DNA of 15,922 nt, taken from positions 1 to 15,922 of the IMG/VR virus record IMGVR_UViG_3300025360_000021; one strand, 5' to 3'. Below are positions 1,503 to 15,249 of the stretch, piece by piece (position 1 is the first letter of the stretch; each line of letters begins with the position of its first letter). Made by a program: the position numbers and the translations under genes. The notes under the pieces were generated by a model, which searched no databases, had not been told where the DNA came from, and saw only the letters and a list, made by a program, of their open reading frames with translations.

Positions 1503-1515
1503 ATTTGTTTCTAAA
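1503..1515 (-). promoter_or_regulatory. Variant of the conserved upstream motif (TTTAGAAACAAAT)
   Basis: 2 mismatches to ATTAAAAACAAAT; 25 nt before ATG 1477. Confidence 0.6.
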
Positions 1516-1540
1516 AACGAAGAAAAAAGAAAAAAAGAAA
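1513..1540 (-). terminator. Oligo-T terminator of the RHH gene
   Basis: Minus strand reads TTTCTTTTTTTCTTTTTTCTTCGTTTTT about 35 nt after the RHH stop codon, typical of archaeal intrinsic terminators. Confidence 0.6.
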
Positions 1541-1575
1541 GGATGATTTTGACGTGGGGCTAGGGGCTAGGGAAC

Positions 1576-1788
1576 CTACCTACCAGGAATCAATATTTGT
1601 CGTAACTCCATTTCATGTTGTTTCAGTCCACTCTCCCTAAAGATCAGATCCCTCACGGCTATCCTAATGGCTTCACTCCTGCTAGGGAACCTACCCTGCC
1701 TAACGAGTTCATCTAACTCTTGCAACATTTGTTTTGGCAGGTGCACGCTTATCAGTATCATTTTATCTTTTGACACCATTCTAGGCAT
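1576..1788 (-). CDS. Ribbon-helix-helix (CopG/Arc/MetJ) transcriptional regulator
   Basis: LISVHLPKQMLQELDELVRQGRFPSRSEAIRIAVRDLI is a textbook archaeal CopG-type RHH. A TATA-like CTTAAAAAT lies about 22-30 nt upstream. Confidence 0.92.
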   Translation of the reverse strand: MPRMVSKDKMILISVHLPKQMLQELDELVRQGRFPSRSEAIRIAVRDLIFRESGLKQHEMELRQILIPGR

Positions 1789-1809
1789 CGAAGAACAATA
1801 CTACATTCT

Positions 1810-1818
1810 ATTTTTAAG
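1810..1818 (-). promoter_or_regulatory. TATA box of the RHH gene (leaderless spacing)
   Basis: CTTAAAAAT on the minus strand at about -30 to -22 from ATG 1788. Confidence 0.5.
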
Positions 1819-1885
1819 CATTACCCATTTATATACCGCAAGCAAGATATCTAAGAAGTAACGATTAAGGTAACCCAAAAGGGAA

Positions 1886-1900
1886 GAAAGATTTATAAAT
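1886..1900 (+). promoter_or_regulatory. Canonical archaeal BRE-TATA promoter
   Basis: GAAAG-ATTTATAAAT upstream of a GGTGA Shine-Dalgarno (1922-1926) and ATG 1932; divergent from the RHH gene. Confidence 0.7.
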
Positions 1901-1931
1901 AAGTGGGTGCACCTTAGTCTTGGTGAAAAAG

Positions 1932-2384
1932 ATGGCAAACCAAACCCAAACAAACAACGTACAAACCCAAACCCAGTGGAAGCGAATTAAAATACCTGCC
2001 AACGCCTTCGAGTTTGTTAAATCGAGAGCGCAAGCCAGGAAGATGCCAATGTGGCAGTATATAACATCATGCATTAACTTTTATGAGACTTCGATGTCTG
2101 ATAAAATAGTGGCAGATAAAACGAAGTTACAAAACGCTAGTTACTATAGCGTTAAGTTGATATTAGCCGTTTCCCAATTCATCCACGAACCAAACGACAA
2201 AACATATGAGAACGCCAGGAAAATAATCAATCAAATAGCCACCAGGAAGCACATTGACGTTAAAGCCTTATCCCAATTAGTGGACATGTATAGGGCACGT
2301 AGAAAGAGATCATATGTACGTGCTATGGAACAAGAACTCATTAGGATTAACGTAGAATTGATGGCAGGTGGTGGGAATGCGTAA
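1932..2384 (+). CDS. Protein with N-terminal RHH-like DNA-binding domain and helical C-terminal domain
   Basis: WKRIKIPANAFEFVKSRAQARKMPMWQYITSCINFYE fits a strand-helix-helix RHH pattern. GGTGA precedes ATG 1932, so the start is shortened from 1920. Confidence 0.75.
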   Translation: MANQTQTNNVQTQTQWKRIKIPANAFEFVKSRAQARKMPMWQYITSCINFYETSMSDKIVADKTKLQNASYYSVKLILAVSQFIHEPNDKTYENARKIINQIATRKHIDVKALSQLVDMYRARRKRSYVRAMEQELIRINVELMAGGGNA

Positions 2385-2643
2385 GGTTAAAGAGATTGAC
2401 ATAACCAGTGATGGGCTTTACTTTGTGGTAAAGACTAAAGAGGGCTTATGGGCTTTTGTTGATGCTGAAGATAGGGAAGTTGTCTTGGGTAACAGTATTG
2501 AGGATGTTATTGCTAAGTTCTATAGTTCAATATCTAGTGATGTTGTGAAACGTGAGGATGTTAAGATCAACGTATTGGATAATGATAAGGCAATAGTTTG
2601 CGTAAAAGATGATTGTTGGGAGTGTAGTGTTGAATTAGAGTGA
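2377..2643 (+). CDS. Small acidic hypothetical protein (HicB-like beta-beta-beta-alpha motif possible)
   Basis: GGTGGTGG SD before ATG 2377; overlaps the upstream stop. VVLGNSIEDVIAK resembles the GxTxEEA motif; three C-terminal Cys. Confidence 0.7.
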   Translation: MRKVKEIDITSDGLYFVVKTKEGLWAFVDAEDREVVLGNSIEDVIAKFYSSISSDVVKREDVKINVLDNDKAIVCVKDDCWECSVELE

Positions 2644-2652
2644 GTGGTTATT

Positions 2653-2946
2653 ATGGATGTTAAATTCAAAATATTCCTTATTTCCACAATCCTTAACCTT
2701 ATGGATTTATTAACGTCATTCGTTGCGTTTAGGCTAGGTTTTGTTGAATTGAATAAGTGGATGGCTATGTTCCACAATAGTTATGTATCTGCCACGGTGG
2801 CAGTAGTATTGTTTGAACTAATCCTGTTAGGATGGTATGTACTATCCAGGTATATCGATCAGGCAAAGTACGGGATGCTTGTGTTTGGTTTGACTAAGCT
2901 TTACCCTATCATTAACAATATACTACTGATCCTTACTTCTTTTTGA
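2653..2946 (+). CDS. Small membrane protein with three hydrophobic segments, DUF5658-like
   Basis: Three hydrophobic stretches and the motif LNLMDLLTSFVAFRLGFVELNKWM (D..T......G..E.N), recalled as the DUF5658 signature. Confidence 0.72.
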   Translation: MDVKFKIFLISTILNLMDLLTSFVAFRLGFVELNKWMAMFHNSYVSATVAVVLFELILLGWYVLSRYIDQAKYGMLVFGLTKLYPIINNILLILTSF

Positions 2947-3163
2947 GTGAAACCATTATCGCCAGTCCATTCTGTTGTATCTGTGTTTTTACGTCAAAGT
3001 CATTCCCAAGCATTTCCTTGATCACGGTTTCCAACTTACCTGGATCTATGCCGTCCAACTTAATGAACATGTACCCCTGGTGCAACCTGAAGATGTTCAC
3101 TACGAAGTTCGCTATCATGTTCACATGCATGTCCTGGATTATACCACTCAAATCGATACTCAT
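2933..3163 (-). CDS. Small alpha/beta hypothetical protein
   Basis: 76-aa ORF; ATG 25 nt downstream of an exact motif copy; converges on and overlaps the membrane-protein gene by 14 nt. Confidence 0.75.
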   Translation of the reverse strand: MSIDLSGIIQDMHVNMIANFVVNIFRLHQGYMFIKLDGIDPGKLETVIKEMLGNDFDVKTQIQQNGLAIMVSLKKK

Positions 3164-3188
3164 ACAGTTTTCACCACAATTAATTATT

Positions 3189-3201
3189 ATTTGTTTTTAA
3201 T
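3189..3201 (-). promoter_or_regulatory. Conserved upstream motif ATTAAAAACAAAT
   Basis: Exact copy; overlaps the stop of the upstream gene; 25 nt to ATG 3163. Confidence 0.8.
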
Positions 3202-3427
3202 CAAGTCTTGGTATCTTATCAGCAACGTTCCTAATCCTAATGACAATCACAACATCGTTGTTATCATACGATACATCTATGTTGTGATCCACGGAATACA
3301 AGTACTTATGTGCATACGATACTAAGCCTGTTATCAAGTTTTTGTACGAAGTAATCATTCCAGACAGCACGTACACCTTATCCCTTGTGTTGATCATATT
3401 GTTTGTCTTATCGTTTATCTTCCTCAC
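3197..3427 (-). CDS. Small alpha/beta hypothetical protein
   Basis: ORF flanked by motif copies on both sides. GTG at 3427 gives a 23-nt spacing; TTG at 3433 would give 17 nt. Confidence 0.68.
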   Translation of the reverse strand: MRKINDKTNNMINTRDKVYVLSGMITSYKNLITGLVSYAHKYLYSVDHNIDVSYDNNDVVIVIRIRNVADKIPRLD

Positions 3428-3450
3428 AAGCAATGTGTACGTAACTAATT

Positions 3451-3463
3451 ATTTGTTTTTAAT
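3451..3463 (-). promoter_or_regulatory. Conserved upstream motif ATTAAAAACAAAT
   Basis: Exact copy; 3448-3467 is identical over 20 bp to 3186-3205. Confidence 0.8.
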
Positions 3464-3500
3464 CAAGACAGTGCTAGGGTTCGTGTTCTGTATCGTGTAG

Positions 3501-3570
3501 GTAACTATGTGTAACCTATAGTTACTACGTATTACTACGTATTATATTGTATAACTACGTGTGTATTTGT
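3501..3570. repeat. Degenerate 10-bp-period tandem array (consensus RTWACTAYGT)
   Basis: gtaactatgt/gtaacctata/gttactacgt/attactacgt/attatattgt/ataactacgt/gtgtatttgt in the non-coding gap between divergent promoters. Confidence 0.7.
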
Positions 3571-3593
3571 AAAAATGAGGATTGGACACGTTG

Positions 3594-3606
3594 ATTAAAA
3601 ATAAAT
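3594..3606 (+). promoter_or_regulatory. Motif variant ATTAAAAATAAAT upstream of the capsid gene
   Basis: 1 mismatch to consensus; 29 nt to ATG 3636. Confidence 0.72.
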
Positions 3607-3635
3607 TAATGTTTGCCTATGGAAACGTGACCAAT

Positions 3636-4022
3636 ATGGCTAGAGGGAGAGGCCTACCTAAGCCTGGAAATTCGAGGCTAGCGAAGTGGCAGGCTAAGTA
3701 CGATCCAACGGTAGTGCAAACAAGGTTCACTGAGGTACAGCCAGTTGCCGTAAGTAGGGCACAGGAGGGTATAGTAAGTATCGCAAACGTGCAATCTCTG
3801 ATAGGTGGCGTACTTGATCAGTACGGTATCGCAGGTCCAATGAGGGCAACATACATCGCCTTCGGCGAAAAGGTTTGGCACGCAACACAAAGGCTAACTG
3901 GGCAAGCGCTTGCTAACGAGGTGAATGGTCTCACGTCATACTTCCAAACCGCATTCGGTGCTAACCCAACAATACTACAGGCAATAGCCCAAGCCCTTGG
4001 CGTCAGCGGTTTGACTTACTAA
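3636..4022 (+). CDS. Major capsid protein, rudivirus (SIRV2 P134-like) fold
   Basis: 128 aa. R.AKWQAK, VL.QYGI.GP.RA.Y..FG.KV, G.AL.N..NGL..Y...AF.ANP.IL match the SIRV coat protein as recalled. Start set at MARGRG. Confidence 0.92.
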   Translation: MARGRGLPKPGNSRLAKWQAKYDPTVVQTRFTEVQPVAVSRAQEGIVSIANVQSLIGGVLDQYGIAGPMRATYIAFGEKVWHATQRLTGQALANEVNGLTSYFQTAFGANPTILQAIAQALGVSGLTY

Positions 4023-4051
4023 TGACGTAATATAGCGTAAATCGTTTCAAA

Positions 4052-4064
4052 ATTAAAAACAAAT
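4052..4064 (+). promoter_or_regulatory. Conserved upstream motif ATTAAAAACAAAT
   Basis: Exact copy; 24 nt to ATG 4089. Confidence 0.8.
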
Positions 4065-4084
4065 TTTGTTTTTTCCTTTTTCCT
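4064..4084 (+). terminator. Probable oligo-T terminator of the capsid transcript
   Basis: TTTTGTTTTTTCCTTTTTCCT about 40 nt after the capsid stop, nested within the next gene's promoter region. Confidence 0.5.
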
Positions 4085-4088
4085 CACG

Positions 4089-5138
4089 ATGAAGGTACTC
4101 ATAATACACGCTAAATCACCTAGCCTAGCCACAGTAGCTAATCACTTAGCTAAGGTTGGTAGATCAATAGGGCACGATGTTAGGGTAATGAGTGACTACG
4201 TCCACCAGGACTTTCTTTTCTACAGACCAGACTCAATAATATGGATCGAACCTGTCAATGTTCCTATGAGTTCACGTTATGCAGGGCAGTATTCAACGAA
4301 CAAAATCTACGCAAAGTGGTTAAAGCAATTGTGGTATGGTACGTGTGAGGGTACGCCTTATGGCGAACCTGCCAAGTACCCTGCCTGGTATCAAATAGAC
4401 TTTATTGCAAACAGCTTATTCACGGCTAATAAGCTTACGGAAGTCAATTACCACGTGATTGACATTGTTCATCACGCTTATGATCCAGATGAAAATAAGG
4501 AAGCGATTGAGTATGCGGATTTCCTTAGGAAAAAGGTTGAGCGTGATTTTTCGGGTAAGGTTATATTTGCAATTGCGGAAGGTGCTCATAAGAGAAAAGG
4601 ATGGGAGAAATTGATCCAAGCACTAAAACTAATACCAGACAACATTAGGGAGAAATTCGTGATATTGGCGATAGCACATAAATCCACGATTGATAAGGTA
4701 CTTCCAGATGCGCCTAAAAAGTCAATCTATGTTGTTGGGCAGTTTGGCGAAATGGCTAGGAAGCAAGTCCTAGCCTTATTCGCAATCGCCGATTACGTCT
4801 TGGTTCCATCGCTTGCGGAAGGGTTTGGACTGCCCGTGTTGGAAGCCAATAGTTTGGGCAGGTTGGGTATTTTCGTGAACATGGAACCATACAACGAATT
4901 TGCCGATACTAAAGCCAACATCACATTCCCTTGGGATACAATCAAGGAAGTGATTGACAACGGCGTTGAATTTGAGTTACACGACTACGATCCACAGTAC
5001 CTAGCTGATGCCATTATCGAGGCAGTGGATATGGCTAAGAGCGGTGAATATGAGGAAAGAGCTAAGCGTGCTTACGAAGCCGTTAAGGACATGACAATTA
5101 CAAACTTATACAGCAAAATCATTAAGTACATCGAGTGA
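4089..5138 (+). CDS. Glycosyltransferase, GT-B fold, family 4
   Basis: FIANSLFT, HKRKGWEKLIQA and ADYVLVPSLAEGFGLPVLEANSLG with an intact EX7E motif; adjacent to the capsid gene as in SIRV-type viruses. Confidence 0.93.
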   Translation: MKVLIIHAKSPSLATVANHLAKVGRSIGHDVRVMSDYVHQDFLFYRPDSIIWIEPVNVPMSSRYAGQYSTNKIYAKWLKQLWYGTCEGTPYGEPAKYPAWYQIDFIANSLFTANKLTEVNYHVIDIVHHAYDPDENKEAIEYADFLRKKVERDFSGKVIFAIAEGAHKRKGWEKLIQALKLIPDNIREKFVILAIAHKSTIDKVLPDAPKKSIYVVGQFGEMARKQVLALFAIADYVLVPSLAEGFGLPVLEANSLGRLGIFVNMEPYNEFADTKANITFPWDTIKEVIDNGVEFELHDYDPQYLADAIIEAVDMAKSGEYEERAKRAYEAVKDMTITNLYSKIIKYIE

Positions 5139-5144
5139 GTAGTC

Positions 5145-6404
5145 GTGTCCGTAGTCCAATCGTACAGTCTCTTCGAGACAGGTGGCGTGGATCAACCAAA
5201 AGTCATCCTGAACAATAAGCAGTATGCACCGATACTACCGCTCAGGTTCCCAATACAGTTCTTCCCGTTCAACTTCGTGATGGAAGTATCATTACTGCTT
5301 GATTTTTTGTTCAACATTAATTTCAACGTGTTGATAGAACTCAATCAATACACGTTACAAGGTATTCAGTTAATGATCCCACAGTTCCAGGTACCACAAA
5401 TCAGTTTACCATCAACTGAGCAATTGAGTAAGTGCTATTACGGACAATCAACATTCGATAATTGCTATTATGATCCAGGTTTCACAATCAATAAGGTAAG
5501 GGATTACCTACGTAGTGCAATCAACAAAGTCAGTAGGAACATGTCCACTCCCAACTTCCTAAGCGGATTGGACTACCCTGATTGGTTCCAGTACTACGCA
5601 AATAGGATACTAAACACGGCAATACAGACGTTAGAGAAAACCGTGATTCTTGATCTAGCGTTGTTTGATTTCTCGGAGTTTAGTTCCGAGACTGAGGATG
5701 GTAATACGTACTTGCCGTTTCAGTGGCTAACAACGAATCCCGAGTTGAACCAACAAATTGAGTATCCCGAATTTGTTTTTGTGGATGACTTGATGTGGGG
5801 CACGGTACTCGATTGGATGTACCTTGATCTATCGATTTTCACGTCACACGAAACATCAATCCTTGGCGAACCGTATGCGCAATTCATGGATGCCGTAATC
5901 GATGCAATAATGAGTAACTACAACCCGTTCCGAACGGCAACGAAGCTTGCGTTCATTGATCCATCGATACCATCCATACCCATACCACCAACGCTAACGG
6001 AATTATTCGCCGAAGCGTTTCCACAGATCATGGAGAATGCACCATTTGCGCCATTAACGGCACGTGCTGAACGTTGGGGCAGGGCTATGGATCTAATCAA
6101 GACAATCAGGAGGACTGTTAGGAATATGTTGATGAACGTGGTTGCTAACCCAATCTTGATCAACGCCTATGAGGACGCTAGTGTTGAGTATTGCATGGCT
6201 TTTCATCACAACCACAATAGGACACGTTACCTGGCGTGGAAGGGTGTTGGTCTTGAAACGTTTAATAAGGCATGGCTTAGTAAGTGGGTAGGGATGGGTT
6301 TAGATCCGAATATCTTAAATAACTTGTTAAATATACTGAGCACAGTATGTCCGAGACAAATAGCGGGATTCAAGGGAGTGGACAGCCCGTTAGCCAATCA
6401 ATAA
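5145..6404 (+). CDS. Probable minor virion protein with a C-terminal capsid-protein-like helical domain
   Basis: 419-aa acidic/aromatic ORF in the structural operon. Contains CYYGQSTFDNCYYDP, two LDxxx(F/L)DxSxF repeats and a C-terminal KWVGMGLDPNILNNL resembling the capsid's FQTAFGANPTILQAI. Confidence 0.72.
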   Translation: MSVVQSYSLFETGGVDQPKVILNNKQYAPILPLRFPIQFFPFNFVMEVSLLLDFLFNINFNVLIELNQYTLQGIQLMIPQFQVPQISLPSTEQLSKCYYGQSTFDNCYYDPGFTINKVRDYLRSAINKVSRNMSTPNFLSGLDYPDWFQYYANRILNTAIQTLEKTVILDLALFDFSEFSSETEDGNTYLPFQWLTTNPELNQQIEYPEFVFVDDLMWGTVLDWMYLDLSIFTSHETSILGEPYAQFMDAVIDAIMSNYNPFRTATKLAFIDPSIPSIPIPPTLTELFAEAFPQIMENAPFAPLTARAERWGRAMDLIKTIRRTVRNMLMNVVANPILINAYEDASVEYCMAFHHNHNRTRYLAWKGVGLETFNKAWLSKWVGMGLDPNILNNLLNILSTVCPRQIAGFKGVDSPLANQ

Positions 6405-6616
6405 TACCACCAATAACGCAACCACAGACGCCAATTGATCCAAAAGCCAAGGCGTTTACGGACAAGCTTATGGAACTCATCGGCGAAGTCTATACGTTGT
6501 CCTTAGAGATAGCATCGATAGATGATCCAAACCTACTTAATCACCCAGTCGTAAAGCAAGCCCGTAAAGTTGTGGCTAAGGTTAAGGAACTTAAGGATGT
6601 GTTGGGTACTAAGTGA
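6347..6616 (+). CDS. Small helical-hairpin hypothetical protein
   Basis: 89 aa; Pro/Gln-rich N-terminus overlapping the upstream gene by 58 nt, then two amphipathic helices; followed by a motif copy. Confidence 0.78.
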   Translation: MSETNSGIQGSGQPVSQSIIPPITQPQTPIDPKAKAFTDKLMELIGEVYTLSLEIASIDDPNLLNHPVVKQARKVVAKVKELKDVLGTK

Positions 6617-6630
6617 TTGATTCCTTACCT

Positions 6631-6643
6631 ATTAAAAACAAAT
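6631..6643 (+). promoter_or_regulatory. Conserved upstream motif ATTAAAAACAAAT
   Basis: Exact copy; 25 nt to ATG 6669. Confidence 0.8.
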
Positions 6644-6668
6644 TATAATTAATTGTTTTTTCCACTCG

Positions 6669-7310
6669 ATGTCAATATTTGGTGTTCCATTTAAACAGCC
6701 ATTCCAACGACTCAGGGCTAGTGATTGGAATGCGGTAGTCATGGCACTCGATTATTTATACATGATTGATTCACAATTATTCTACGACCTAACGTCTGGA
6801 ACATTCACACCATACTTCGATGAACTATACACAGCTAGTAGTGCATTCTTTGGGAATGAAATCTACGTGGAAGGGTATAAGGTGTTGCACGACTTGGATC
6901 CAATCTACATTGCATCATTCTTACAGGGTGCTGTCAATCAAATCTACAACTACATATCCGTTTACTTAATCAACATACAGAACACGGTTCAACAAATACA
7001 ATCAACGGTTCAAAACATCAAGCTTTATGCTAGCCCAACGGCATTACAATCATTCGTACTTGCCGTAACGACTACGCCAACGACGTTGGTTAGTTCATCA
7101 ACACCGATTAAGCGTGCATTGTTGTTCGTTACTACGGATACGACTTATGTGGTCTATATAGGTGGCGCAAGCGGACAGCACTTCCCAATACCACCAGGTG
7201 GGCAGATTGAGGTTGATGTTTGTGATGCAATACAGATCTATCTTAGGTCTGAGAACTATAGTTACGTCAGGGTGTTGCTTGAATTAACGAGTCAATCAAC
7301 GTGTAATTAA
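6669..7310 (+). CDS. Putative fibre/terminal-structure protein (SDWN motif, short coiled coil, C-terminal beta-sandwich)
   Basis: LRASDWNAVVMAL near the N-terminus, heptads IQNTVQQIQSTVQNI, and a beta-rich end (VVYIGG...FPIPPGGQIEV...IYL...VRVLLE). Confidence 0.72.
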   Translation: MSIFGVPFKQPFQRLRASDWNAVVMALDYLYMIDSQLFYDLTSGTFTPYFDELYTASSAFFGNEIYVEGYKVLHDLDPIYIASFLQGAVNQIYNYISVYLINIQNTVQQIQSTVQNIKLYASPTALQSFVLAVTTTPTTLVSSSTPIKRALLFVTTDTTYVVYIGGASGQHFPIPPGGQIEVDVCDAIQIYLRSENYSYVRVLLELTSQSTCN

Positions 7311-7321
7311 GGCGATAGCTG

Positions 7322-8002
7322 ATGGGTATTCCGTTGCCGTTGGTATCGTGTAGTGATAGTACTCTTTCACTATCCAGTTTTTCGGGAAGCGTTACTCTAA
7401 CATTGCACTGCCCTGGCGATTTGATAGAACCAACGCTGTGGAACAATAGGCGATTATGCTTGGAATACCAGTTGTGCTATCTCGGTTTGTTGATTCAGCA
7501 AATAAGTAATCAAAACCTTGGCGTTGGTGATTCATTAACGAATCAGTACAATAATGTCGTTAGTGAGTTATCGAGTTTGCCACCTGTGACGGCAGGACAG
7601 CCAGTCACTCACGAACAATTCAATGCGATTTGGGATCACATCAACCTTGCGTACAACGTATTGACTAATTTCTTCAGTATCGTGTGGGGCTATGGATCAT
7701 TACAACCTGCCCAGGTCGTTCCATATGAGAACCAGTTATTGTACGTCATCAACAACATACCGAAGAAAAAAACGATGGATCTGATGAAATCGAGTGACTG
7801 GAACGCATTGACACAAGCGTTGTACGCAATTGATCAAATATTACAATACATAAAGCAAAATTGGTTGTTACCTGCCATGCAAGGGCAAGTAACGTTTGCA
7901 GGGGTAAACGTGATTGCGACTACATCATTTAGTTCACCATCGATAACCACATCTATCACTAAGGCATCTACGTCAATGACTACGTCGGCAGGTACTGGAT
8001 AA
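7322..8002 (+). CDS. Putative fibre/structural protein with two SDWN-like repeats and a Ser/Thr-rich C-terminal tag
   Basis: PVTHEQFNAIWDHI and LMKSSDWNALTQAL; ends TTSFSSPSITTSITKASTSMTTSAGTG. Confidence 0.75.
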   Translation: MGIPLPLVSCSDSTLSLSSFSGSVTLTLHCPGDLIEPTLWNNRRLCLEYQLCYLGLLIQQISNQNLGVGDSLTNQYNNVVSELSSLPPVTAGQPVTHEQFNAIWDHINLAYNVLTNFFSIVWGYGSLQPAQVVPYENQLLYVINNIPKKKTMDLMKSSDWNALTQALYAIDQILQYIKQNWLLPAMQGQVTFAGVNVIATTSFSSPSITTSITKASTSMTTSAGTG

Positions 8003-8010
8003 TTACCGTG

Positions 8011-8023
8011 ATTAAAAACAAAT
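8011..8023 (+). promoter_or_regulatory. Conserved upstream motif ATTAAAAACAAAT
   Basis: Exact copy; 25 nt to ATG 8049. Confidence 0.8.
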
Positions 8024-8048
8024 GAGTGATTACGATTCATTGTTTTGT

Positions 8049-8222
8049 ATGAGTAACACGGTGGGCAGTGCAACGTGTAATGTAAAGGATTTAATGACTA
8101 AGCAACAACCATTCATCAAATTCCCAATAGTAACTACGTCCACATCATTTAGTTCACCATCAATATCGGTGGTTATTGCCAAGGCATCCACATCAATGAC
8201 TACGTCGGCAGGTACTGGGTAA
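8049..8222 (+). CDS. 57-aa protein consisting largely of the shared Ser/Thr-rich C-terminal tag
   Basis: ATG 8022 lies inside the motif, whereas ATG 8049 fits the 25-nt spacing. Ends TSFSSPSISVVIAKASTSMTTSAGTG with synonymous divergence from the upstream copy. Confidence 0.75.
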   Translation: MSNTVGSATCNVKDLMTKQQPFIKFPIVTTSTSFSSPSISVVIAKASTSMTTSAGTG

Positions 8223-8230
8223 CTATCGTG

Positions 8231-8243
8231 ATTAAAAACAAAT
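8231..8243 (+). promoter_or_regulatory. Conserved upstream motif ATTAAAAACAAAT
   Basis: Exact copy; 23 nt to GTG 8267. Confidence 0.8.
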
Positions 8244-8266
8244 GATTAAATGCCATTTACATCGAT

Positions 8267-9133
8267 GTGTCAATAGCAATTGAGGAAATAGCAAGGAATT
8301 ACATTAGGTACGGTGCAAAAAGGCTAGGCATCGAGGATAGGTTAAATCGATTCACGGCATACATAAAATCGCTAGATAAATCATGTGCAAGGAATGATGT
8401 TGTATCTCACTACGTGGATTCGGTCTTCCTACCAATCCTGGAAAATAGCGAACAATTAGCCGTTGCCGTAAGCAAAAAAGAAATCCCTAGATATTATAGA
8501 AATAGATTTACTAGGGCACTTAGTACTAGGGATAGGGCTTTCATTAGGTGGTTCCTAAAGAATTACGTAATGAATTACACGGATGTTGATGCTGTGGTTA
8601 GCAATAACTACCAATTACTCCCGTGCTTCTTCGGTTACTGCTTTAATGTTTGCCCTATTGGTGGTGGTACATGTGCCAGCAATGCGGTTTATACATGCCT
8701 ATCCCTCACTGAGTTGCCTCAGACACAGCCTTGCTGTACTGGGACTTATTTTAATGCCTATGGTAAGGTTTTTGACCTGGTTGATAATGCACCATGGGTT
8801 AGTAGCTACAGTACTGGTGGGTTTGGCATTAATACCCAAGTACCTCAATCCGCAGGAACGTTTACACTAACTGGGAGTGTAACGGGACCATCCTGCTTTC
8901 CATCAAGCGGTGTAACCCTTAACCTAGACCTTATTGTGAGTGTTACTGGTTCTACTAGTGGTACATGTGCCAGTAGTTGCCCAAGTGGTGCACCGTGTAT
9001 TACTACAGGTGTTCCGTATTGCCCAGGTACAGTGTATAGTGTAGCTTATTTCCCAGTGCTTTACTACAGCGTTAATCAAACCGTATTGCCTAACTCATCA
9101 TATAGTGTTTGGTGGCAGGTTTCTGTTTCATGA
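8267..9133 (+). CDS. Cys-rich probable virion/attachment protein
   Basis: 288 aa with a basic helical N-terminal third and a Gly/Ser/Thr/Cys-rich beta C-terminal region; 13 Cys; GTCAS occurs twice. Confidence 0.72.
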   Translation: MSIAIEEIARNYIRYGAKRLGIEDRLNRFTAYIKSLDKSCARNDVVSHYVDSVFLPILENSEQLAVAVSKKEIPRYYRNRFTRALSTRDRAFIRWFLKNYVMNYTDVDAVVSNNYQLLPCFFGYCFNVCPIGGGTCASNAVYTCLSLTELPQTQPCCTGTYFNAYGKVFDLVDNAPWVSSYSTGGFGINTQVPQSAGTFTLTGSVTGPSCFPSSGVTLNLDLIVSVTGSTSGTCASSCPSGAPCITTGVPYCPGTVYSVAYFPVLYYSVNQTVLPNSSYSVWWQVSVS

Positions 9134-9145
9134 TTAAAAACAAAT
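9133..9145 (+). promoter_or_regulatory. Conserved upstream motif ATTAAAAACAAAT
   Basis: Exact copy overlapping the upstream TGA; 24 nt to ATG 9170. Confidence 0.8.
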
Positions 9146-9169
9146 TTTTTCGTTTCCTGTGTCAAATCG

Positions 9170-9946
9170 ATGGGTAAGTACAAAATCCTTTTTGAGGGGG
9201 ATCGAACGATTGTGGTTCAACTGAAGGATGGGATTAAGGCGCAAGACTTGGTTGAAAAAGGCGTTTTCATTCAGAAGGCAGATGGTCTTTATGATAAGAA
9301 AGGTAGGAAGGTGATCATCAGCGATAGGGAGTTTTTTCGCATAGGTGAACCGAGACTTGTTGGTTCATGCGGTGGTTCCGTGTATGAGATATTTGATAAC
9401 GTAGTCGTTAGTGCAGGGCATGTGATGGATTGCGTGGACAGTCTCATTGTGGATAACACGAATTATAAACTAGTGAATAAGGAAGTAATGCTTCCTGGCA
9501 CTTATCCGCAATGGTTGTGGTATATATTCGATTTGTTTGGTTACGAACCCTATAGCCCTTATGACTACGGCATAGCCACAATCCAAGCTAATCAATCGAT
9601 CAAGTACAATGCTGATAAGCCGTATCCACACGCTATCTATGTGGCAGGTAATTGCATGTCCAAGTACGATCAGAATTGTTTAGGGATTGCACTTGCAACA
9701 CCGAACATGGAAATATCAGACCTAAATGCCTTAATCGATAGGCAGTTAATGCTTGATTGCACATACTGGAACTACCAAGCAGTTGCGGTTGGTGTTGATG
9801 TAGGTAAAGTATTCGTTAATTACGGCGATGGTGAGTACGCATTACTGAGACCTGCCCTACTAATGCGATTCCTGAATTTATCGGGAATACCAGGTTGTTC
9901 GGGCAGTATGGTTTACCCAACGACGTCGTACCCAGACTTTCCATAA
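9170..9946 (+). CDS. Putative chymotrypsin/trypsin-like serine protease (clan PA)
   Basis: CGGSVY...VVVSAGHV (H84), YDYGIATI (D132) and PGCSGSMV (S244) in canonical H-D-S order. Confidence 0.72.
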   Translation: MGKYKILFEGDRTIVVQLKDGIKAQDLVEKGVFIQKADGLYDKKGRKVIISDREFFRIGEPRLVGSCGGSVYEIFDNVVVSAGHVMDCVDSLIVDNTNYKLVNKEVMLPGTYPQWLWYIFDLFGYEPYSPYDYGIATIQANQSIKYNADKPYPHAIYVAGNCMSKYDQNCLGIALATPNMEISDLNALIDRQLMLDCTYWNYQAVAVGVDVGKVFVNYGDGEYALLRPALLMRFLNLSGIPGCSGSMVYPTTSYPDFP

Positions 9947-9958
9947 TTAAAAACAAAT
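9946..9958 (+). promoter_or_regulatory. Conserved upstream motif ATTAAAAACAAAT
   Basis: Exact copy overlapping the upstream TAA; 21 nt to ATG 9980 or 27 nt to ATG 9986. Confidence 0.8.
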
Positions 9959-9979
9959 TATTCGTTGTGGATTTTCAAA

Positions 9980-10618: not shown

Positions 10619-10643
10619 TAACGATTGATTATTGACTATCCTT

Positions 10644-10656
10644 ATTAAAAACAAAT
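10644..10656 (+). promoter_or_regulatory. Conserved upstream motif ATTAAAAACAAAT
   Basis: Exact copy; 27 nt to ATG 10684. Confidence 0.8.
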
Positions 10657-10683
10657 TGTTTCTTTACAATCAAAATCCTTGAT

Positions 10684-10923
10684 ATGAGTACTAACGTGAG
10701 TGTTATCATTAGGGAGATACATAGGGCAGACGTTCCTGGGAACACACACTACATAGCAAGCGTGCAATTACTTGATGGCGAAGACGGTTGGGTAAGCCCT
10801 GCCTTTCCAGTTGATTTTCACGACAAACACGAACTAGAACGAAAAATAGCACAGGAAGTAACAATGTACGTCATGGCTAAGCAGAACTTCGGTAAGCACA
10901 TAGCCAGGGGCAGGTGGTTATGA
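10684..10923 (+). CDS. Small hypothetical protein (three strands plus helix), coupled to the large gene
   Basis: 79 aa; its TGA overlaps the next ATG (ATGA at 10920-10923). Confidence 0.78.
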   Translation: MSTNVSVIIREIHRADVPGNTHYIASVQLLDGEDGWVSPAFPVDFHDKHELERKIAQEVTMYVMAKQNFGKHIARGRWL

Positions 10924-13900
10924 GTTACATACCATTCAACATAGATGAAATCAAGGTATTAATCCAGGACAACCTAGCCAACGGCGTAATCGAGAAATCA
11001 TTATCAGAACTGAAGGAAACGGATCTAGCCAAGGCAGTCATCGAGTATGGTGGTTTAACCGATCCAATAGGGCAGTTGGAATCATGGATAGCACAGCAAT
11101 TACAATCGTTCGGTAATTGGTTGGTTCAATCATTCCAGGCAATCATTAGCCCTATCGTTTCGGCTATCAACACGGTATCGAGTTATGTGGCACAGGGGTT
11201 TGCATCGTTATCATCAATGATTACGCAATCGTTCCAGTCATTCGCATCGCAAATAACTAGTGCATTATCGAGTATCCAATCGGCATTCCAATCCTTGGGA
11301 TCAACATTCCAATCATTCGCTAGCCAATTGGGATCAACGTTACAGTCATTCTTTAGCCAAATATCGTATGCATTGACTACGGCATTCTCTCAATTATCGA
11401 GTGCATTCCAGAGTTTGGGATCACAGATCCAAGGTGCATTCTCGGGCATTGTTTCGGCATTGAGTTCCTTAGGATCCCAAGTACAATCGGCATTGAGTAA
11501 CTTCGCCAACGTACTAACACACGTTGTTTTTCCGAGTATCCAGAATTGGATCACGTCAGTCGTTAATTCTGTAATAAGTGGCTTACAGTCATTCGCAAGC
11601 CAGGCACAGACTGTCTTTAGCAACATCGTGAGTGGGATAGAGTCATTCGGCAAGACATTGGAAGGTGTACTAGGCACGTTCTGGAATGATTTACAGAATG
11701 CGTTTAGCACGATCGGTAAGTACGTAACTGGTTTCGTATCATCGATAGAGAAAGGGTTTGAGCAATTCATCAAGGATGTCCAAGCATTCGGTGGCATGAT
11801 ACAATCAACACTATCAAGCATTGGATCCCTCATTCTAAAGGGTTTCGTGGATATCGGCAGGGGATTTGAGTCGTTATTTAGCGATATTCAGAAGGTGTTT
11901 GCGGGATTCGTAAAGTTCATGGAAGGGATACCGAAGATGCTAAGTGAGATCCCAAGTAAGGTCTTTGAGGCTGTGTATAAAGCATTTTTAGACTTCCTAA
12001 AGATCACGGGCATCGATAAGGCGTTTACAATCATTGTTGATTTCTTTAGGAACGTGGCTAAGTTCTTCGAGAATTTGGGAAATAACCCAATCATTAAGGC
12101 GATAATTAAGGACTTTGAGTTGTTCGCATCGGGCATCGAAAATGCATTCACTAATTTCTATAATATATTAATAGGAATATATCACTGGATAGCTAAAGCA
12201 TTGCAATCCTTGGCAACTGATTTCATGAACACCGCTAAGTCGTTGGCAAGCAGTTTCTTGGGTTTGGGTAAGGGATTTACGTCGTTCGTTGTTGATATTA
12301 CTAAGTTCGGTGTTTCATCGCTTTACCTACCTGTGGCGATTGAGACGTTGCCGTTACTAATGACAATGAGTATTTTCAAATCGGAACCGTACATAATCAT
12401 AAAGAGTGGTGTGGATCCCATCAAAGTTGCGATTCCCGATCTAATTAATGCGTTCGGTGCTATATCGCTGATTTCGGCATCCGTGTTCGGTGTCGTGTAC
12501 GGCATAGGTGCATTGATTGAGAAAATCGGATCAGCAACTGGATCCCAAGAAATAGATTTGTCACCATTGGGATTAGGTGTAAAGCTAAGGCTTAACCTAG
12601 GCAAGCTATTGGAACCAATCGGTAACCTACTCGAAAAGGTTGGTGATGAAATAGGCAGGGGCTTAGCACTAAGCGGTTCGTTAGCGTTTATGGAACCGTT
12701 ACGTTATATATGGCGTTACGTGTGGTGGTTGGTGTTCTACGCCATGGGTATGGGAAACATGCCGTTCGAACTACCTGGACATCACGAATTGTTTGACATT
12801 GCCAGGAGGTTCGATGTTACACAAAACATAAACTATATAGCTAACACAATGATATATAGAGGCTTCCCGTACTGGTATATAGCAAAAACAATAGCATTGC
12901 CAACCACGTTCACATCTATAGACGTGGCTAATCAAGCGTTAGGTGATTTCAAAAAGGAAATACAGAATAACTACATCACGGTGGTTGATAAGTTCGGGAA
13001 TACCAGGATCATACCGATTGCACCATTGTTTGAATTGCCAACGACACACGACTTGGTTGAATTCATGCTTAGGGATTTGTTCCTACCTGCCAGGGCACCG
13101 CCTGCCGAACAACCTGCATTAGCATATCAATCATTTATCAAGGCTATGTGGGCACGTGGTGTACCACCAGACGTTGCGTACATGTACTATCTCAGGGCTT
13201 ATGAACTTCCATCAGCAACGCAAGTGTGGGATTTCACAATGAGGGCATTGTCAGGGTTTGCATGGTACGTACCACCGCAGGAAGTACAAACGTTCGCCGA
13301 ATCCGAAGCCAAAATAATCAACGCATTCGTTCCGCAGGTGCCTGCCAAGCTTAACTTCCAGTATAACCTTGTGTTGTTAGCATTGGCAGAGTATCAAAAG
13401 TGGCACGGTAGGGCTCATTTTGCTTGGATTAATGATCCAACGACTGGGAAATCATATACATCTGATGCGTGGTTGATTATTGATCAATCAGCTCACTTAC
13501 TCGATAGGACTGACATTGAGCACCTGGTACGTCATGGCATTTGGGATTACTATCAGAGGAAGTACGGTATTACTAACGAAACAACTATGTACGATGTGTT
13601 GGGTAAGGTTGTGGAACCGCAACCAACGTCACCGATTCAAATATACACGGACTACGTCACGAACGTGTTGATGGCTAGGGGCTTCCATCCGTACGTTGCA
13701 CCGTTGATAGCATTACGTAATGTCTTTGACGTAACGACTGGTGCAAAGACCTTGCTAAGGACAGGTTTGCTGAATCTGATTAGGGAGAATATTGAGTTGA
13801 TACCGATTGCGTTGCAATTAATGAGTCATTTCTTCGATGTGTCCGTGCACGTTGCTTACTTCGATATGTATAACCAAAAGTGGGTAACGGGATGGCTTAA

Positions 13901-15230
13901 TGCACCAGTCCGTTACCTGGATCCCGAGGCTAAGTTACTAGTGCTCAGGGCATTGATGGACAAAGTCAATACGTTTATGAGGTATATGTTCCGTGCACTG
14001 GAATACGGCGTTAGGGATTACCTGGTTGGTGTTAATGACTCAATAAACTACATGGTAGGGTACGTAAAAGACGTGTTGGATAAGTACTATGCACCGCTCT
14101 ATAAATCCATAACAGGCGTTGAAATGCACCTAACATGGGATTCAGCATTTAACGACGCCATAGCTAAGTACTTTGAGATAGAGCAACTGATTGGTACATT
14201 CCGTAGAATTAGGTATTATGCCAGGTATGCGTTATATAGGATCCTAGGGATCATAGGCATGGGGCTTATTCCAAAGACAGAGATTCCTAAGTATATTGAT
14301 GAATTAACAACATTAATGAAAGAAACACCACAAGCAAAGGAAGTATTCATGTTCATTTCAGACCTGGTTTATCACAGATACTTGCTTAGGAACTATGAAA
14401 CGATGGTTAGGGTTTGGTTGGGCAGGCATGCAATGACAATCGATCAAGCCTTGCAAACATTGTTGGCACAGAACATAGATCCAGACTACGCAAAAGCCTT
14501 AGTCAATGCATACGCTAGCCCGTATTATCCAACGATTGTGCAATTGATTGTAATGAGTGAGTACAACCCTGCCTTTTTGGGTAAGCTAGGGCAGGTAATA
14601 CAACTAATGAGGATTCCACAAGATTGGGCACAGATTTGGCAAGATTACGCATACATAAGGGCTTATGTTAGGTGGTTCATACGTGCATTGAATGAGGTCG
14701 TTACTGTGGTTTCCAGGATACCACTGACTGTGAAAATAGTCATGCCAATGACGCAGGGCAATAAGACGGTTACATTGCAGGATGTTGTGAATGATATGTT
14801 TAAGCAAGCACAAGCGTTTGGTTTTGATAGTACTAAGCTTAGCTTCGTTAAGGAACTAATAGACTTTAGGTACGTACTTACTCAATACAGGAATTCAATC
14901 CCAACGCCGTGGCATGCATTGAATTTAACATACTACCTGCCAGACCCTGACACGTTCATAGACAACCTATCACAGAACTGGATCATATCGCAATACGGAG
15001 TATCACTAATCAAGACACTGGCAAGGTTTAGGAAGTACGGCAGGTGGATGTTCGAGACCGTGTACTGGGCAGTCAGGGCTTATGCACGTGGTTACATGGC
15101 AGGGCAAGACCTATACCAATTCTTGCAATCCCTACAATCGTTTGGATTGTCTAAGTACGACATCGAGATGATTAGGAACTGGGCATTCGCAATGAGTTGT
15201 TACTACGGTGCATGCCAATACCCATGGTAA
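10920..15230 (+). CDS. Large virion protein with tape-measure-like amphipathic repeats, candidate terminal fibre/end-structure protein
   Basis: About 1436 aa; GGTGG SD before ATG 10920. N-terminal 7/11-residue F/L-Q-S repeats, a hydrophobic middle segment and a helical-repeat C-terminal half. Size and position are analogous to the largest rudivirus protein (SIRV2 P1070). Confidence 0.8.
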   Translation: MSYIPFNIDEIKVLIQDNLANGVIEKSLSELKETDLAKAVIEYGGLTDPIGQLESWIAQQLQSFGNWLVQSFQAIISPIVSAINTVSSYVAQGFASLSSMITQSFQSFASQITSALSSIQSAFQSLGSTFQSFASQLGSTLQSFFSQISYALTTAFSQLSSAFQSLGSQIQGAFSGIVSALSSLGSQVQSALSNFANVLTHVVFPSIQNWITSVVNSVISGLQSFASQAQTVFSNIVSGIESFGKTLEGVLGTFWNDLQNAFSTIGKYVTGFVSSIEKGFEQFIKDVQAFGGMIQSTLSSIGSLILKGFVDIGRGFESLFSDIQKVFAGFVKFMEGIPKMLSEIPSKVFEAVYKAFLDFLKITGIDKAFTIIVDFFRNVAKFFENLGNNPIIKAIIKDFELFASGIENAFTNFYNILIGIYHWIAKALQSLATDFMNTAKSLASSFLGLGKGFTSFVVDITKFGVSSLYLPVAIETLPLLMTMSIFKSEPYIIIKSGVDPIKVAIPDLINAFGAISLISASVFGVVYGIGALIEKIGSATGSQEIDLSPLGLGVKLRLNLGKLLEPIGNLLEKVGDEIGRGLALSGSLAFMEPLRYIWRYVWWLVFYAMGMGNMPFELPGHHELFDIARRFDVTQNINYIANTMIYRGFPYWYIAKTIALPTTFTSIDVANQALGDFKKEIQNNYITVVDKFGNTRIIPIAPLFELPTTHDLVEFMLRDLFLPARAPPAEQPALAYQSFIKAMWARGVPPDVAYMYYLRAYELPSATQVWDFTMRALSGFAWYVPPQEVQTFAESEAKIINAFVPQVPAKLNFQYNLVLLALAEYQKWHGRAHFAWINDPTTGKSYTSDAWLIIDQSAHLLDRTDIEHLVRHGIWDYYQRKYGITNETTMYDVLGKVVEPQPTSPIQIYTDYVTNVLMARGFHPYVAPLIALRNVFDVTTGAKTLLRTGLLNLIRENIELIPIALQLMSHFFDVSVHVAYFDMYNQKWVTGWLNAPVRYLDPEAKLLVLRALMDKVNTFMRYMFRALEYGVRDYLVGVNDSINYMVGYVKDVLDKYYAPLYKSITGVEMHLTWDSAFNDAIAKYFEIEQLIGTFRRIRYYARYALYRILGIIGMGLIPKTEIPKYIDELTTLMKETPQAKEVFMFISDLVYHRYLLRNYETMVRVWLGRHAMTIDQALQTLLAQNIDPDYAKALVNAYASPYYPTIVQLIVMSEYNPAFLGKLGQVIQLMRIPQDWAQIWQDYAYIRAYVRWFIRALNEVVTVVSRIPLTVKIVMPMTQGNKTVTLQDVVNDMFKQAQAFGFDSTKLSFVKELIDFRYVLTQYRNSIPTPWHALNLTYYLPDPDTFIDNLSQNWIISQYGVSLIKTLARFRKYGRWMFETVYWAVRAYARGYMAGQDLYQFLQSLQSFGLSKYDIEMIRNWAFAMSCYYGACQYPW

Positions 15231-15236
15231 TTACCC

Positions 15237-15249
15237 ATTAAAAACAAAT
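15237..15249 (+). promoter_or_regulatory. Conserved upstream motif ATTAAAAACAAAT
   Basis: Exact copy; 26 nt to ATG 15276. Confidence 0.8.

What the first reader, a model, noticed from the sequence alone, without database searches (positions are those of the whole stretch)
1503..15249. A 13-bp element, ATTAAAAACAAAT, precedes almost every structural-module gene at fixed spacing
Seen: exact copies at 3189(-), 3451(-), 4052, 6631, 8011, 8231, 9133, 9946, 10644 and 15237, with variants at 3594 and 1503(-). All are in the sense orientation of the next gene, 21-29 nt (mostly 23-27) before its start, and several overlap the previous stop codon. Structural genes lacking it (5145, 6347, 7322, 10920) are closely coupled to the upstream gene. 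The genes at 1932 and 15431 use ordinary GAAAG-BRE/TATA promoters instead. Known: archaeal TATA boxes are degenerate and normally need an upstream BRE; no consistent BRE precedes these copies. Inference: a virus-specific late promoter class read by a viral activator or altered initiation factor. It could be a TTAAAAAC TATA box with a fixed AAAT extension and a short leader, or a BRE/TATA replacement on leaderless mRNAs.
Basis: partly seen in the sequence, partly recalled or inferred. Interest (0 to 1): 0.8.

Follow-up and report, generated by a model that had tools for sequence, protein, structure and literature searches.

The report
Uniform core promoter of a rudivirus-like virus
A 13-base sequence repeated exactly before nearly every gene unit of this uncultivated rod-shaped archaeal virus is most likely the virus's own standardised version of the ordinary archaeal promoter, a known kind of feature in this virus family, here unusually exact and changing in step across relatives.

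Summary
ATTAAAAACAAAT occurs 10 times exactly, where 0 are expected, plus 2 variants. All 12 copies point at the next gene and end 23-29 nt before its start codon.

The window is a complete IMG/VR contig of a divergent rudivirus-like virus; its coat protein is about 40% identical to those of SIRV and ARV.

In about 90 related hot-spring contigs, 99 of 101 unique RTTAAAAAYAAAT sites precede a start codon by 22-32 nt (mode 25), against 10.5% of random positions. The motif is about 90% conserved between lineages and its flanks about 40%.

The element spans -38 to -26 from the start codon, the BRE/TATA zone of leaderless archaeal genes. An A/T-rich tail and a T-rich proximal element follow it. I read it as the core promoter of separate, leaderless transcription units.

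It is the counterpart of the SIRV1/2 TATA+GTC consensus, next to two canonical GAAAG-BRE/TATA promoters of the rudiviral early type.

New here are the exactness and a one-branch switch of position 9 from T to C at 7-10 promoters per long contig, sparing the coat-protein promoter.

No viral TFB was found. No activator, "late" timing or transcription start site is shown. Which bases form the TATA box is unresolved.

The parts
1503..1515 (-). Variant copy TTTAGAAACAAAT, 25 nt before ATG 1477 (GT4 glycosyltransferase 398-1477, followed by ORF 3-356)
   Evidence: same variant at the orthologous site in contig B
3189..3201 (-). Exact copy, 25 nt before ATG 3163 (76-aa ORF); the TAA stop of the upstream gene lies inside the motif
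3451..3463 (-). Exact copy, 23 nt before GTG 3427 (76-aa ORF); divergent from the coat-protein promoter
3594..3606 (+). Variant ATTAAAAATAAAT (T at position 9), 29 nt before the coat-protein ATG 3636; the leader-like GACCAAT at 3629-3635 is conserved
4052..4064 (+). Exact copy, 24 nt before ATG 4089 (glycosyltransferase; unit 4089-6616); the spacer has T6 and T5 runs
6631..6643 (+). Exact copy, 25 nt before ATG 6669 (213-aa protein; unit 6669-8002)
8011..8023 (+). Exact copy, 25 nt before ATG 8049 (57-aa ORF); lies in a 128-nt direct repeat
8231..8243 (+). Exact copy, 23 nt before GTG 8267 (288-aa protein); second copy of the direct repeat
9133..9145 (+). Exact copy, 24 nt before ATG 9170 (258 aa); its first base is the last base of the upstream TGA stop
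9946..9958 (+). Exact copy, 21 or 27 nt before ATG 9980/9986 (about 210 aa); its first base is the last base of the upstream TAA stop
10644..10656 (+). Exact copy, 27 nt before ATG 10684 (79 aa, then the coupled 1436-aa P1070-like protein 10920-15230)
15237..15249 (+). Exact copy, 26 nt before ATG 15276 (conserved 36-aa ORF 15276-15386)
1886..1899 (+). Canonical promoter GAAAGA|TTTATAAA for the unit starting at 1920/1932 (the other promoter class)
   Evidence: conserved in relatives
15393..15406 (+). Canonical promoter GAAAGG|TTTTTAAT, 24 nt before ATG 15431 (54-aa ORF); serves as the spacing yardstick
1806..1818 (-). Possible degenerate copy CTTAAAAATAGAA, 17 nt before the first and 26 nt before the second ATG of the ribbon-helix-helix (RHH) gene
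   Evidence: sequence read directly; RHH identified
1576..1788 (-). RHH (CopG/NikR-like) DNA-binding protein, the only recognisable candidate viral regulator in the window

Best explanation
The 13-mer is the core promoter of this virus, in a standardised form specific to its lineage. It sits where the host TBP/TFB/RNA polymerase pre-initiation complex assembles, at -38 to -26 from the start codon. Three further features follow it: an A/T-rich tail (positions 14-17), a T-rich proximal element, and a pyrimidine-G step about 24 nt downstream. Each copy therefore starts a separate leaderless or nearly leaderless mRNA. Genes without a copy are translated as coupled downstream cistrons. Shown: occurrence, orientation, spacing, selective conservation, and lineage-specific states. 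Inferred: that transcription starts about 23-25 nt after the motif, and that the 3' part of the motif (AAYAAAT plus the next bases) is the TATA box while the 5' A-rich part (RTTAAA/AAAAAY) takes the BRE position. I put that register at about 0.55 and promoter function as such at about 0.85. The virus then has two promoter classes, as SIRV2 does: a few canonical strong GAAAG-BRE/TATA promoters, which is the early or anti-defence type in rudiviruses, and the uniform class for everything else.
For: Occurrence and spacing:
- 10 exact copies against 0 expected.
- 12 of 12 copies are sense-oriented, 23-29 nt before a start codon.
- In relatives, 99 of 101 unique sites precede a start codon by 22-32 nt (mode 25), against 10.5% of random positions.

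Conservation:
- In orthologous promoters of the window and contig C, motif columns are 89% identical. The flanks are 44% and 37% identical, and the spacing is kept while the spacer sequence diverges.
- In the divergent intergenic region 3463-3594, the two motif copies are the only shared elements.

Position:
- Canonical promoters have 24 nt (window 15393), 20 nt (L071) and 20-22 nt (18 sites of the sister clade) before the ATG.
- SIRV2 leaderless genes have 17-22 nt after GTC, so 20-25 nt after the TATA end.
- This places the TATA box of the 13-mer class in its 3' part.

Variants:
- Variant copies keep AACAAAT but carry G at positions 5 or 6, which is BRE-like and bad for a TATA box. Position 1 is A or G.
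- Aligned on the ATG, C9 coincides with the C of GAAAC in sister-clade promoters.

Other signals:
- The logo shows A/T at positions 14-17, a T-rich stretch at the proximal-element position, and G at the 24th nt after the motif in 61 of 105 sites.
- Archaeal core promoter layout and the leaderless norm in Sulfolobus are described in bioRxiv 10.1101/2025.11.20.689296.
- No Shine-Dalgarno site precedes these genes, whereas the coupled gene 10920 has one.
Against: No transcription start site, TBP/TFB binding or expression data exist for this virus, and its host is unknown. TTAAAAAY on its own resembles a consensus TATA box more than AAYAAATW does. In the favoured register, C9 of the window's lineage falls inside or next to the TATA box. 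Some weaker putative promoters in relatives keep GTTAAAAATC without AAAT. The conserved block, including T and G just upstream of the motif, is longer than BRE plus TATA, so an extra factor may be involved. Many of the 101 sites are orthologues and not independent.
Confidence: 0.8

Rival explanations
1. TTAAAAAY (positions 2-9) is the TATA box, and AAAT is a fixed downstream extension like the GTC of SIRV1/2 or a downstream BRE. No upstream BRE is used, and the mRNAs carry 5-8 nt leaders without a Shine-Dalgarno site.
For: TTAAAAAY resembles consensus archaeal TATA boxes. Position 9 (C or T) would be the tolerant last TATA position. SIRV2 promoters share a TAAAAAT core followed by a fixed extension. 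Some other putative promoters in relatives have GTTAAAAATC without AAAT.
Against: The distance from TATA end to start codon would be 27-31 nt, against 20-25 nt in every canonical comparator. Variant copies put G inside this supposed TATA box but keep the 3' half. Nothing BRE-like lies upstream to set direction.
Confidence: 0.28
2. The invariant block is primarily the binding site of a dedicated sequence-specific factor that recruits or replaces TFB. That factor could be a viral protein, such as the RHH protein or an early small protein, or a host activator like Sta1. The factor and its sites co-evolve. This is compatible with promoter function but adds a required reader.
For: The exactness exceeds what TBP/TFB need: 10 identical 13-mers. 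Conservation extends upstream to T(-1) and G(0). Position 9 switched from T to C on a single branch at 7-10 promoters per long contig, while the coat-protein promoter stayed T. Partial inverted copies in the spacers covary with position 9. There is precedent in Sta1 and SvtR acting at SIRV promoters.
Against: No candidate was shown to bind. No TFB homologue was found. A change of host, with different TBP/TFB preferences, could produce the same concerted switch.
Confidence: 0.2
3. The element acts at the RNA or structural level, as the 5' arm of a terminator hairpin or as a translation signal on polycistronic RNA.
For: Several spacers carry T-runs and a partial inverted copy of the motif core. 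The 6628-6668 stretch folds better than shuffles, z = -3.3.
Against: The predicted stems are only -1 to -8 kcal/mol at 37 C, and 5 of 6 are no better than shuffles. Most sites lack the inverted copy. The copies in the divergent region 3451-/3594+ have no upstream transcript to act on. The fixed distance to start codons is unexplained by termination.
Confidence: 0.04
4. The repeats are mainly recombination junctions that allow gene cassettes to be exchanged between related viruses.
For: The genomes are mosaic at gene boundaries: genes 8049 and 8267 are present in contig C but not in B, and 7322 is 45% identical in B against 75% in C. A 128-nt duplication carries the motif.
Against: Thirteen bases are too short for efficient homologous recombination. 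Orientation and spacing relative to start codons are not explained. This is at most a side effect of promoter uniformity.
Confidence: 0.05

Closest known systems
Virus-specific promoter consensus of SIRV1/SIRV2 (TATA box plus GTC; Kessler et al. 2004, as cited in PMC5569661 and PMC1635249)
   Same: Both viruses belong to the same family by coat-protein fold. In both, most transcription units carry one near-identical element at a fixed distance from the start codon, alongside a few canonical strong BRE/TATA promoters on other genes. SIRV2 has W7-N-GTC before 21 genes, and the exact 13-mer TAAAAATGTCATA occurs 5 times.
   Different: The sequence differs and has no GTC. Here the invariant part lies upstream of and within the TATA zone rather than downstream of it. 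The motif ends 23-27 nt before the start codon, against 17-22 nt after GTC. The copies are more exact: 10 identical 13-mers in 16 kb at 42% G+C. Lineage-wide switching of one position is documented here.
Canonical archaeal core promoter (purine-rich BRE, 8-bp TATA TTTAWATR, A/T-rich proximal element, leaderless mRNA)
   Same: Position relative to the start codon, sense orientation, the A/T-rich tail and the T-rich proximal region all match.
   Different: Host promoters are degenerate, while this one is almost invariant over 13 bases. It contains a C in the window's lineage and lacks the G-rich GAAAG-type BRE that the same genome uses elsewhere.
Conserved regulatory sequences of early or anti-defence genes in archaeal viruses (PMC11065993)
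   Same: Both are promoter-embedded consensus sequences specific to a virus and shared by many genes of one genome.
   Different: Those are built around a strong purine-rich BRE plus TTTAWATA and mark early accessory genes. In this window that type is seen only at 1886 and 15393. The 13-mer marks core, structural and glycosyltransferase genes.
Uniform late or middle promoters of viruses that bring their own reader (for example T4 late TATAAATA with gp55, or giant-virus promoter motifs); a comparison from general knowledge only
   Same: One short exact motif lies before many genes at fixed spacing, sometimes at gene-cassette boundaries.
   Different: Those are read by virus-encoded sigma factors or polymerases. 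No such factor is detectable here, and archaeal viruses are known to depend on host RNA polymerase.

Membership tests
Archaeal core promoter of a leaderless transcription unit | A/T-rich TATA element centred about 26-27 nt upstream of the start site, which for leaderless genes is at the start codon | tested here: met
   The motif spans -38 to -26 from the start codon, with A/T at the next 4 positions. The spacing matches canonical promoters in the same clade and in SIRV2. It was measured against start codons, not against mapped start sites.
Archaeal core promoter of a leaderless transcription unit | Purine-rich BRE directly upstream of the TATA box | tested here: inconclusive
   Nothing purine-rich precedes the 13-mer. 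If the TATA box is the 3' half of the motif, then RTTAAA or AAAAAY takes the BRE position, with a purine at -6 and A at -3. Variants with G at positions 5-6 fit this. The register is not determined.
Archaeal core promoter of a leaderless transcription unit | Sense orientation and fixed distance to the gene, with no Shine-Dalgarno site | tested here: met
   12 of 12 sites in the window and 99 of 101 in relatives. No Shine-Dalgarno-like site precedes these starts, except an internal one at 3163.
Archaeal core promoter of a leaderless transcription unit | Transcription start downstream, and binding by TBP/TFB | not testable with these tools
   No transcript or binding data are available.
SIRV-type TATA+GTC virus-specific promoter | GTC trinucleotide directly downstream of the TATA box | tested here: not met
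   No GTC occurs in or after the motif. SIRV2 shows it before 21 genes.
SIRV-type TATA+GTC virus-specific promoter | One consensus shared by most promoters of a rudivirus genome | tested here: met
   12 of about 15 putative transcription units carry it. The coat protein matches PF12193 at 1.9e-25.
Early or anti-defence regulatory sequence (PMC11065993) | Strong purine-rich BRE plus TTTAWATA core | tested here: not met
   This core is found only at 1886-1899 and 15393-15406, not in the 13-mer.
Promoter read by a virus-encoded TFB (a TFB is annotated in MRV1) | A TFB homologue encoded by the virus | tested here: not met
   tblastn with the MRV1 TFB against the window and all related loci gave a best E-value of 7.2. 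No TFIIB Pfam hit was found in the ORFs tested.
Intrinsic terminator or structured RNA element | A stable hairpin common to the copies | tested here: not met
   Six sites folded at -0.8 to -7.8 kcal/mol, and five were no better than shuffles.

The most novel reading that the evidence does not exclude
The invariant 5' block, together with the conserved T and G just upstream, is a dedicated recognition site for a still unidentified viral or hijacked host transcription factor that takes over the BRE/TFB step. That factor has co-evolved with its sites. On one branch of the virus tree its preference changed, and nearly all promoters followed with a T-to-C switch at position 9, along with partial inverted copies in the spacers. 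The coat-protein promoter did not switch. This would be a natural record of a whole promoter set being retuned in an archaeal virus.
Probability: 0.2. Interest if true: 0.7.

Novelty: new variant of a known kind. Interest (0 to 1): 0.45.

Why it matters
The motif gives a ready-made, sequence-defined promoter class for a widespread but uncultivated clade of hot-spring rudivirus-like viruses. It allows gene starts and transcription units to be annotated without culture.

It also separates the few genes with canonical strong promoters from the rest. In rudiviruses those are candidate early or anti-defence genes.

The clean two-state variation at position 9, C in one clade and T elsewhere, is a natural experiment. 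A simple in vitro transcription assay could test whether archaeal promoter strength and specificity are set by TBP/TFB alone or by an extra reader.

Tried and rejected
- **Phage collection search.** A megablast of the whole window found nothing. Only a protein-level search placed the virus.
- **Kessler et al. 2004.** The paper could not be read, as it is not held. I used what two later papers say about it and re-derived the SIRV2 motif from the genome.
- **IMG/VR scan with the 14-mer ATTAAAAACAAATT.** It cannot show whether unrelated viruses of the same host share the motif.
- **Genome-collection pattern scan.** I skipped it for the same reason.
- **Coat-protein search of 185,579 genomes.** No relative was found, so no host or provirus lead came from it.
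- **Viral TFB.** None was found.
- **Hairpin or terminator reading.** Rejected on folding energies.
- **PDB sequence search.** Searches with ORFs 1932-2384 and 3-359 gave nothing usable.
- **Literature search for the motif string.** Only irrelevant hits were returned.
Full report
**1. What the window is**

The 15,922-base window is an entire IMG/VR contig, UViG_3300025360_000021.
- The ORF at 3636-4022 matches the Sulfolobus virus coat protein family PF12193 at E = 1.9e-25.
- It is 38-44% identical to the major capsid proteins of SIRV, ARV, MRV1, SSRV1 and SRV.
- The window also encodes two GT4 glycosyltransferases (398-1477 on the minus strand, and 4089-5138).
- It also encodes a ribbon-helix-helix (RHH) protein at 1576-1788 on the minus strand.
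- A 1436-aa protein matches the PHROG that I take, from its 1078-position profile, to be the one containing the SIRV large minor structural protein.

It is therefore part of the genome of a divergent, uncultivated rudivirus-like virus with about 42% G+C.

**2.

ATTAAAAACAAAT occurs 10 times exactly, where no shuffle produced even one copy.
- No other 10-mer family is repeated comparably.
- Every copy points at the next gene and ends 23-29 nt before its most plausible start codon.
- Three copies overlap the previous stop codon.
- The genes without a copy abut or overlap the gene before them.
- One of those, 10920, has a GGTGG Shine-Dalgarno-like site.
- Two genes, at 1932 and 15431, are preceded by canonical GAAAGN plus TTTWWWWW promoters instead.
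- The RHH gene has a degenerate look-alike, CTTAAAAATAGAA.

The class also covers glycosyltransferase genes and, in relatives, a methyltransferase gene. "Structural module" is therefore too narrow a label.

**3. Comparative evidence that it is a promoter**

Four related IMG/VR contigs and 80 metagenome loci, some of which repeat the window and those IMG/VR contigs, were retrieved. Their coat proteins are 70-100% identical to the window's. Their record names (for example CisS_all, which I take to mean Cistern Spring) suggest Yellowstone-type acidic hot-spring metagenomes; no source metadata were seen.
- Across them there are 101 unique exact RTTAAAAAYAAAT sites.
- 99 of these are followed in sense by the start codon of an ORF of at least 30 aa at 22-32 nt. 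The commonest gaps are 25 nt (38 sites), 24 nt (24) and 23 nt (14).
- Only 10.5% of random positions meet the same test.
- In ten orthologous promoters of the window and contig C, motif columns are 89% identical. The 21 columns on either side are 44% and 37% identical.
- The spacer length is kept while its sequence is not.

This is the pattern expected of a cis-element under selection whose distance to the gene matters. In the divergent region between 3463 and 3594, where two promoters must exist, the two motif copies are the only shared feature.

**4. Where the parts of the promoter lie**

With a gap of 25 nt, the 13-mer spans -38 to -26 from the start codon. The logo of 105 sites shows several further signals:
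- T at -1 and G at 0, just upstream of the motif
- A/T at positions 14-17
- a T-rich stretch corresponding to about -12 to -8 from the start codon
- G at the 24th nt after the motif in 61 sites, usually after a pyrimidine

The textbook Sulfolobus core promoter is a 6-bp purine-rich BRE, an 8-bp TATA box (TTTAWATR) and an A/T-rich proximal element at -12 to -1, usually on leaderless mRNAs (bioRxiv 10.1101/2025.11.20.689296).

Yardsticks from this clade and from SIRV2 give the distance from the promoter element to the start codon:

| Promoter | Distance to ATG |
|---|---|
| Window 15393, GAAAGG\|TTTTTAAT | 24 nt after TATA |
| L071, GAAAGG\|TTTATAAA | 20 nt after TATA |
| 18 sister-clade sites, GAAACATTTAAATA | 20-22 nt after the element |
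| 13 SIRV2 leaderless genes | 17-22 nt after GTC, so 20-25 nt after TATA |

If TTAAAAAY were the TATA box, the distance would be 27-31 nt. All 12 genes would then have 5-8 nt leaders without a Shine-Dalgarno site. If the TATA box is AAYAAATW or AAATWWTT, the distance is 19-26 nt, which fits leaderless genes.

Three more observations point the same way.
- Variants at 1503(-) in the window, and at L002:1728(+) and 1739(-) in contig B, carry G at positions 5 or 6 but keep AACAAAT. G there is harmful in a TATA box but typical of the GAAAG-type BRE.
- Position 1 is A or G, as expected of the BRE -6 position.
- Aligned on the start codon, C9 coincides with the C of GAAAC in sister-clade promoters.

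Against this, TTAAAAAY looks more like a TATA box than the 3' half does, and some weak putative promoters keep it without AAAT. I therefore give the composite BRE-plus-TATA register about 0.55 and the TATA-plus-extension register about 0.28. Only start-site mapping or footprinting will decide.

**5. Comparison with what is known**

SIRV1 and SIRV2 promoters are reported to have a TATA box and BRE plus, in most cases, a virus-specific GTC just downstream of the TATA box (Kessler et al. 2004, as cited in PMC5569661 and PMC1635249).

I re-derived this from the SIRV2 genome.
- 21 annotated genes are preceded by W7-N-GTC.
- The exact 13-mer TAAAAATGTCATA occurs five times.
- The terminal genes instead have GAGAAAG plus TTTAWATA promoters. 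This is the early or anti-defence class described in PMC11065993.

The window shows the same two-class layout with a different consensus and no GTC. Its invariant bases sit upstream of and within the TATA zone rather than downstream of it. MRV1 and ARV1 show no comparably repeated 13-mer. So this is a new variant of a known kind, not a new kind.

**6. What is new**

The state of the motif follows the virus phylogeny.
- Position 9 is C in one well-supported clade: 16 rows, support 100/99, including the window.
- Position 9 is T in all other motif-bearing lineages.
- Within the C clade, 7-10 promoters in each contig longer than about 8 kb have C. The coat-protein promoter keeps T, the only exceptions being two short contigs with no T copy.
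- The 74-80% lineage ends the motif in AAAA.
- The 70-72% clade lacks the motif altogether. It uses another uniform cassette, GAAACATTTAAATA, often behind a small GC-clamped inverted repeat.

Nearly all promoters of a genome thus changed one base on a single branch. That suggests either a changed reader (viral factor, host factor, or a new host's TBP/TFB) or some form of homogenisation.

In a subset of sites, the spacer carries a partial inverted copy of the motif core that covaries with position 9.

| Site type | Unique sites | TTGTTT in spacer | TTTATT in spacer |
|---|---|---|---|
| C at position 9 | 55 | 11 | 1 |
| T at position 9 | 32 | 1 | 9 |

The predicted hairpins are too weak to matter at hot-spring temperature. 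I have no explanation for this covariation.

**7. What is not supported**

- No TFB homologue occurs in the window or in any related locus. MRV1 is annotated with one.
- Nothing indicates "late" timing.
- The host is unknown, and neither the genome collection nor pattern scans gave a lead.

**8. Verdict**

The element is best read as the standardised core promoter of separate leaderless transcription units in a rudivirus-like virus, functionally equivalent to the SIRV TATA+GTC consensus. The activator or altered-factor idea is possible but unsupported. The one-branch switch at position 9 makes it testable.

Noticed in passing
window 3629-3635; SIRV2 locus L012 just upstream of 14058: The 7-9 bases before the coat-protein start codon (GACCAAT-ATG) are conserved in all lineages of this clade. 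They reappear as TGACCAAAT-ATG before the SIRV2 coat-protein gene, although the proteins are only about 40% identical. The coat-protein promoter also has the longest gap (29 nt), so this gene probably has a short conserved leader.
   Followed up: partly
window 7910-8037 and 8130-8257: A 128-nt direct repeat (80% identical, 220 nt apart) duplicates the last 15 codons of gene 7322-8002 (ITKASTSMTTSAGTG) onto the 57-aa ORF 8049-8222, together with the promoter copy. Contig C shares identical flanks at its two corresponding promoters, which suggests the duplication is also there.
   Followed up: partly
window 6634-6660, 8015-8046, 4056-4075, 10649-10661; relatives L004:12669 and 16694: In a subset of promoters, the spacer holds a partial inverted copy of the motif core that covaries with position 9: TTGTTT with C, TTTATT with T. 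The predicted stems are weak. The purpose is unknown.
   Followed up: partly
window 4065-4083, 6654-6660, 9146-9151: Runs of 5-6 T lie between the promoter motif and the next start codon, a few bases to about 60 nt after the previous gene's stop. They could act as oligo-T terminators for the upstream unit, nested inside the next promoter.
   Followed up: no
L002:1728-1751 (contig B): Two variant copies overlap by two bases in a near-perfect 24-nt palindrome, GTTAGGAACAAATTTGTTTCTAAT. They face a methyltransferase gene and a 72-aa ORF, which looks like a bidirectional promoter sharing one central A/T box.
   Followed up: partly
loci L082-L094 (coat protein 70-72% identical): The sister clade has no 13-mer. 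Instead it has its own uniform promoter cassette, GAAACATTTAAATA, 20-22 nt before start codons, often preceded by a cgcc...ggcg inverted repeat. The palindrome ATGTATACAT occurs at four places in L094 (eight matches counting both strands).
   Followed up: partly
window 15431-15595; window 8049-9133; contigs B and C: The genomes are mosaic at gene boundaries. Genes 8049 and 8267 have orthologues in contig C but not in B. Gene 7322 is 45% identical in B but 75% in C. The 54-aa ORF 15431-15595, which has a canonical strong promoter, was found only in the clade with C at position 9.
   Followed up: partly
L004:1-63 and the end of L009 (contig IMGVR_UViG_3300026625_000003): The two ends of this 26.8-kb relative are inverted copies of each other over at least 63 nt plus the first gene. 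It is probably a complete linear genome with inverted terminal repeats, as in rudiviruses. The window is a partial genome.
   Followed up: no
window 15276-15386: A 36-aa ORF directly after the large structural gene has its own exact promoter copy and is conserved in all lineages (57-97% identity). It is likely a real small gene that ORF-length filters would miss.
   Followed up: partly
MRV1 record NC_074633.1, 19288-20136 (locus L013): Metallosphaera rod-shaped virus 1 is annotated with a putative transcription initiation factor B, so some rudiviruses may carry their own initiation factor. None was found in this clade.
   Followed up: partly
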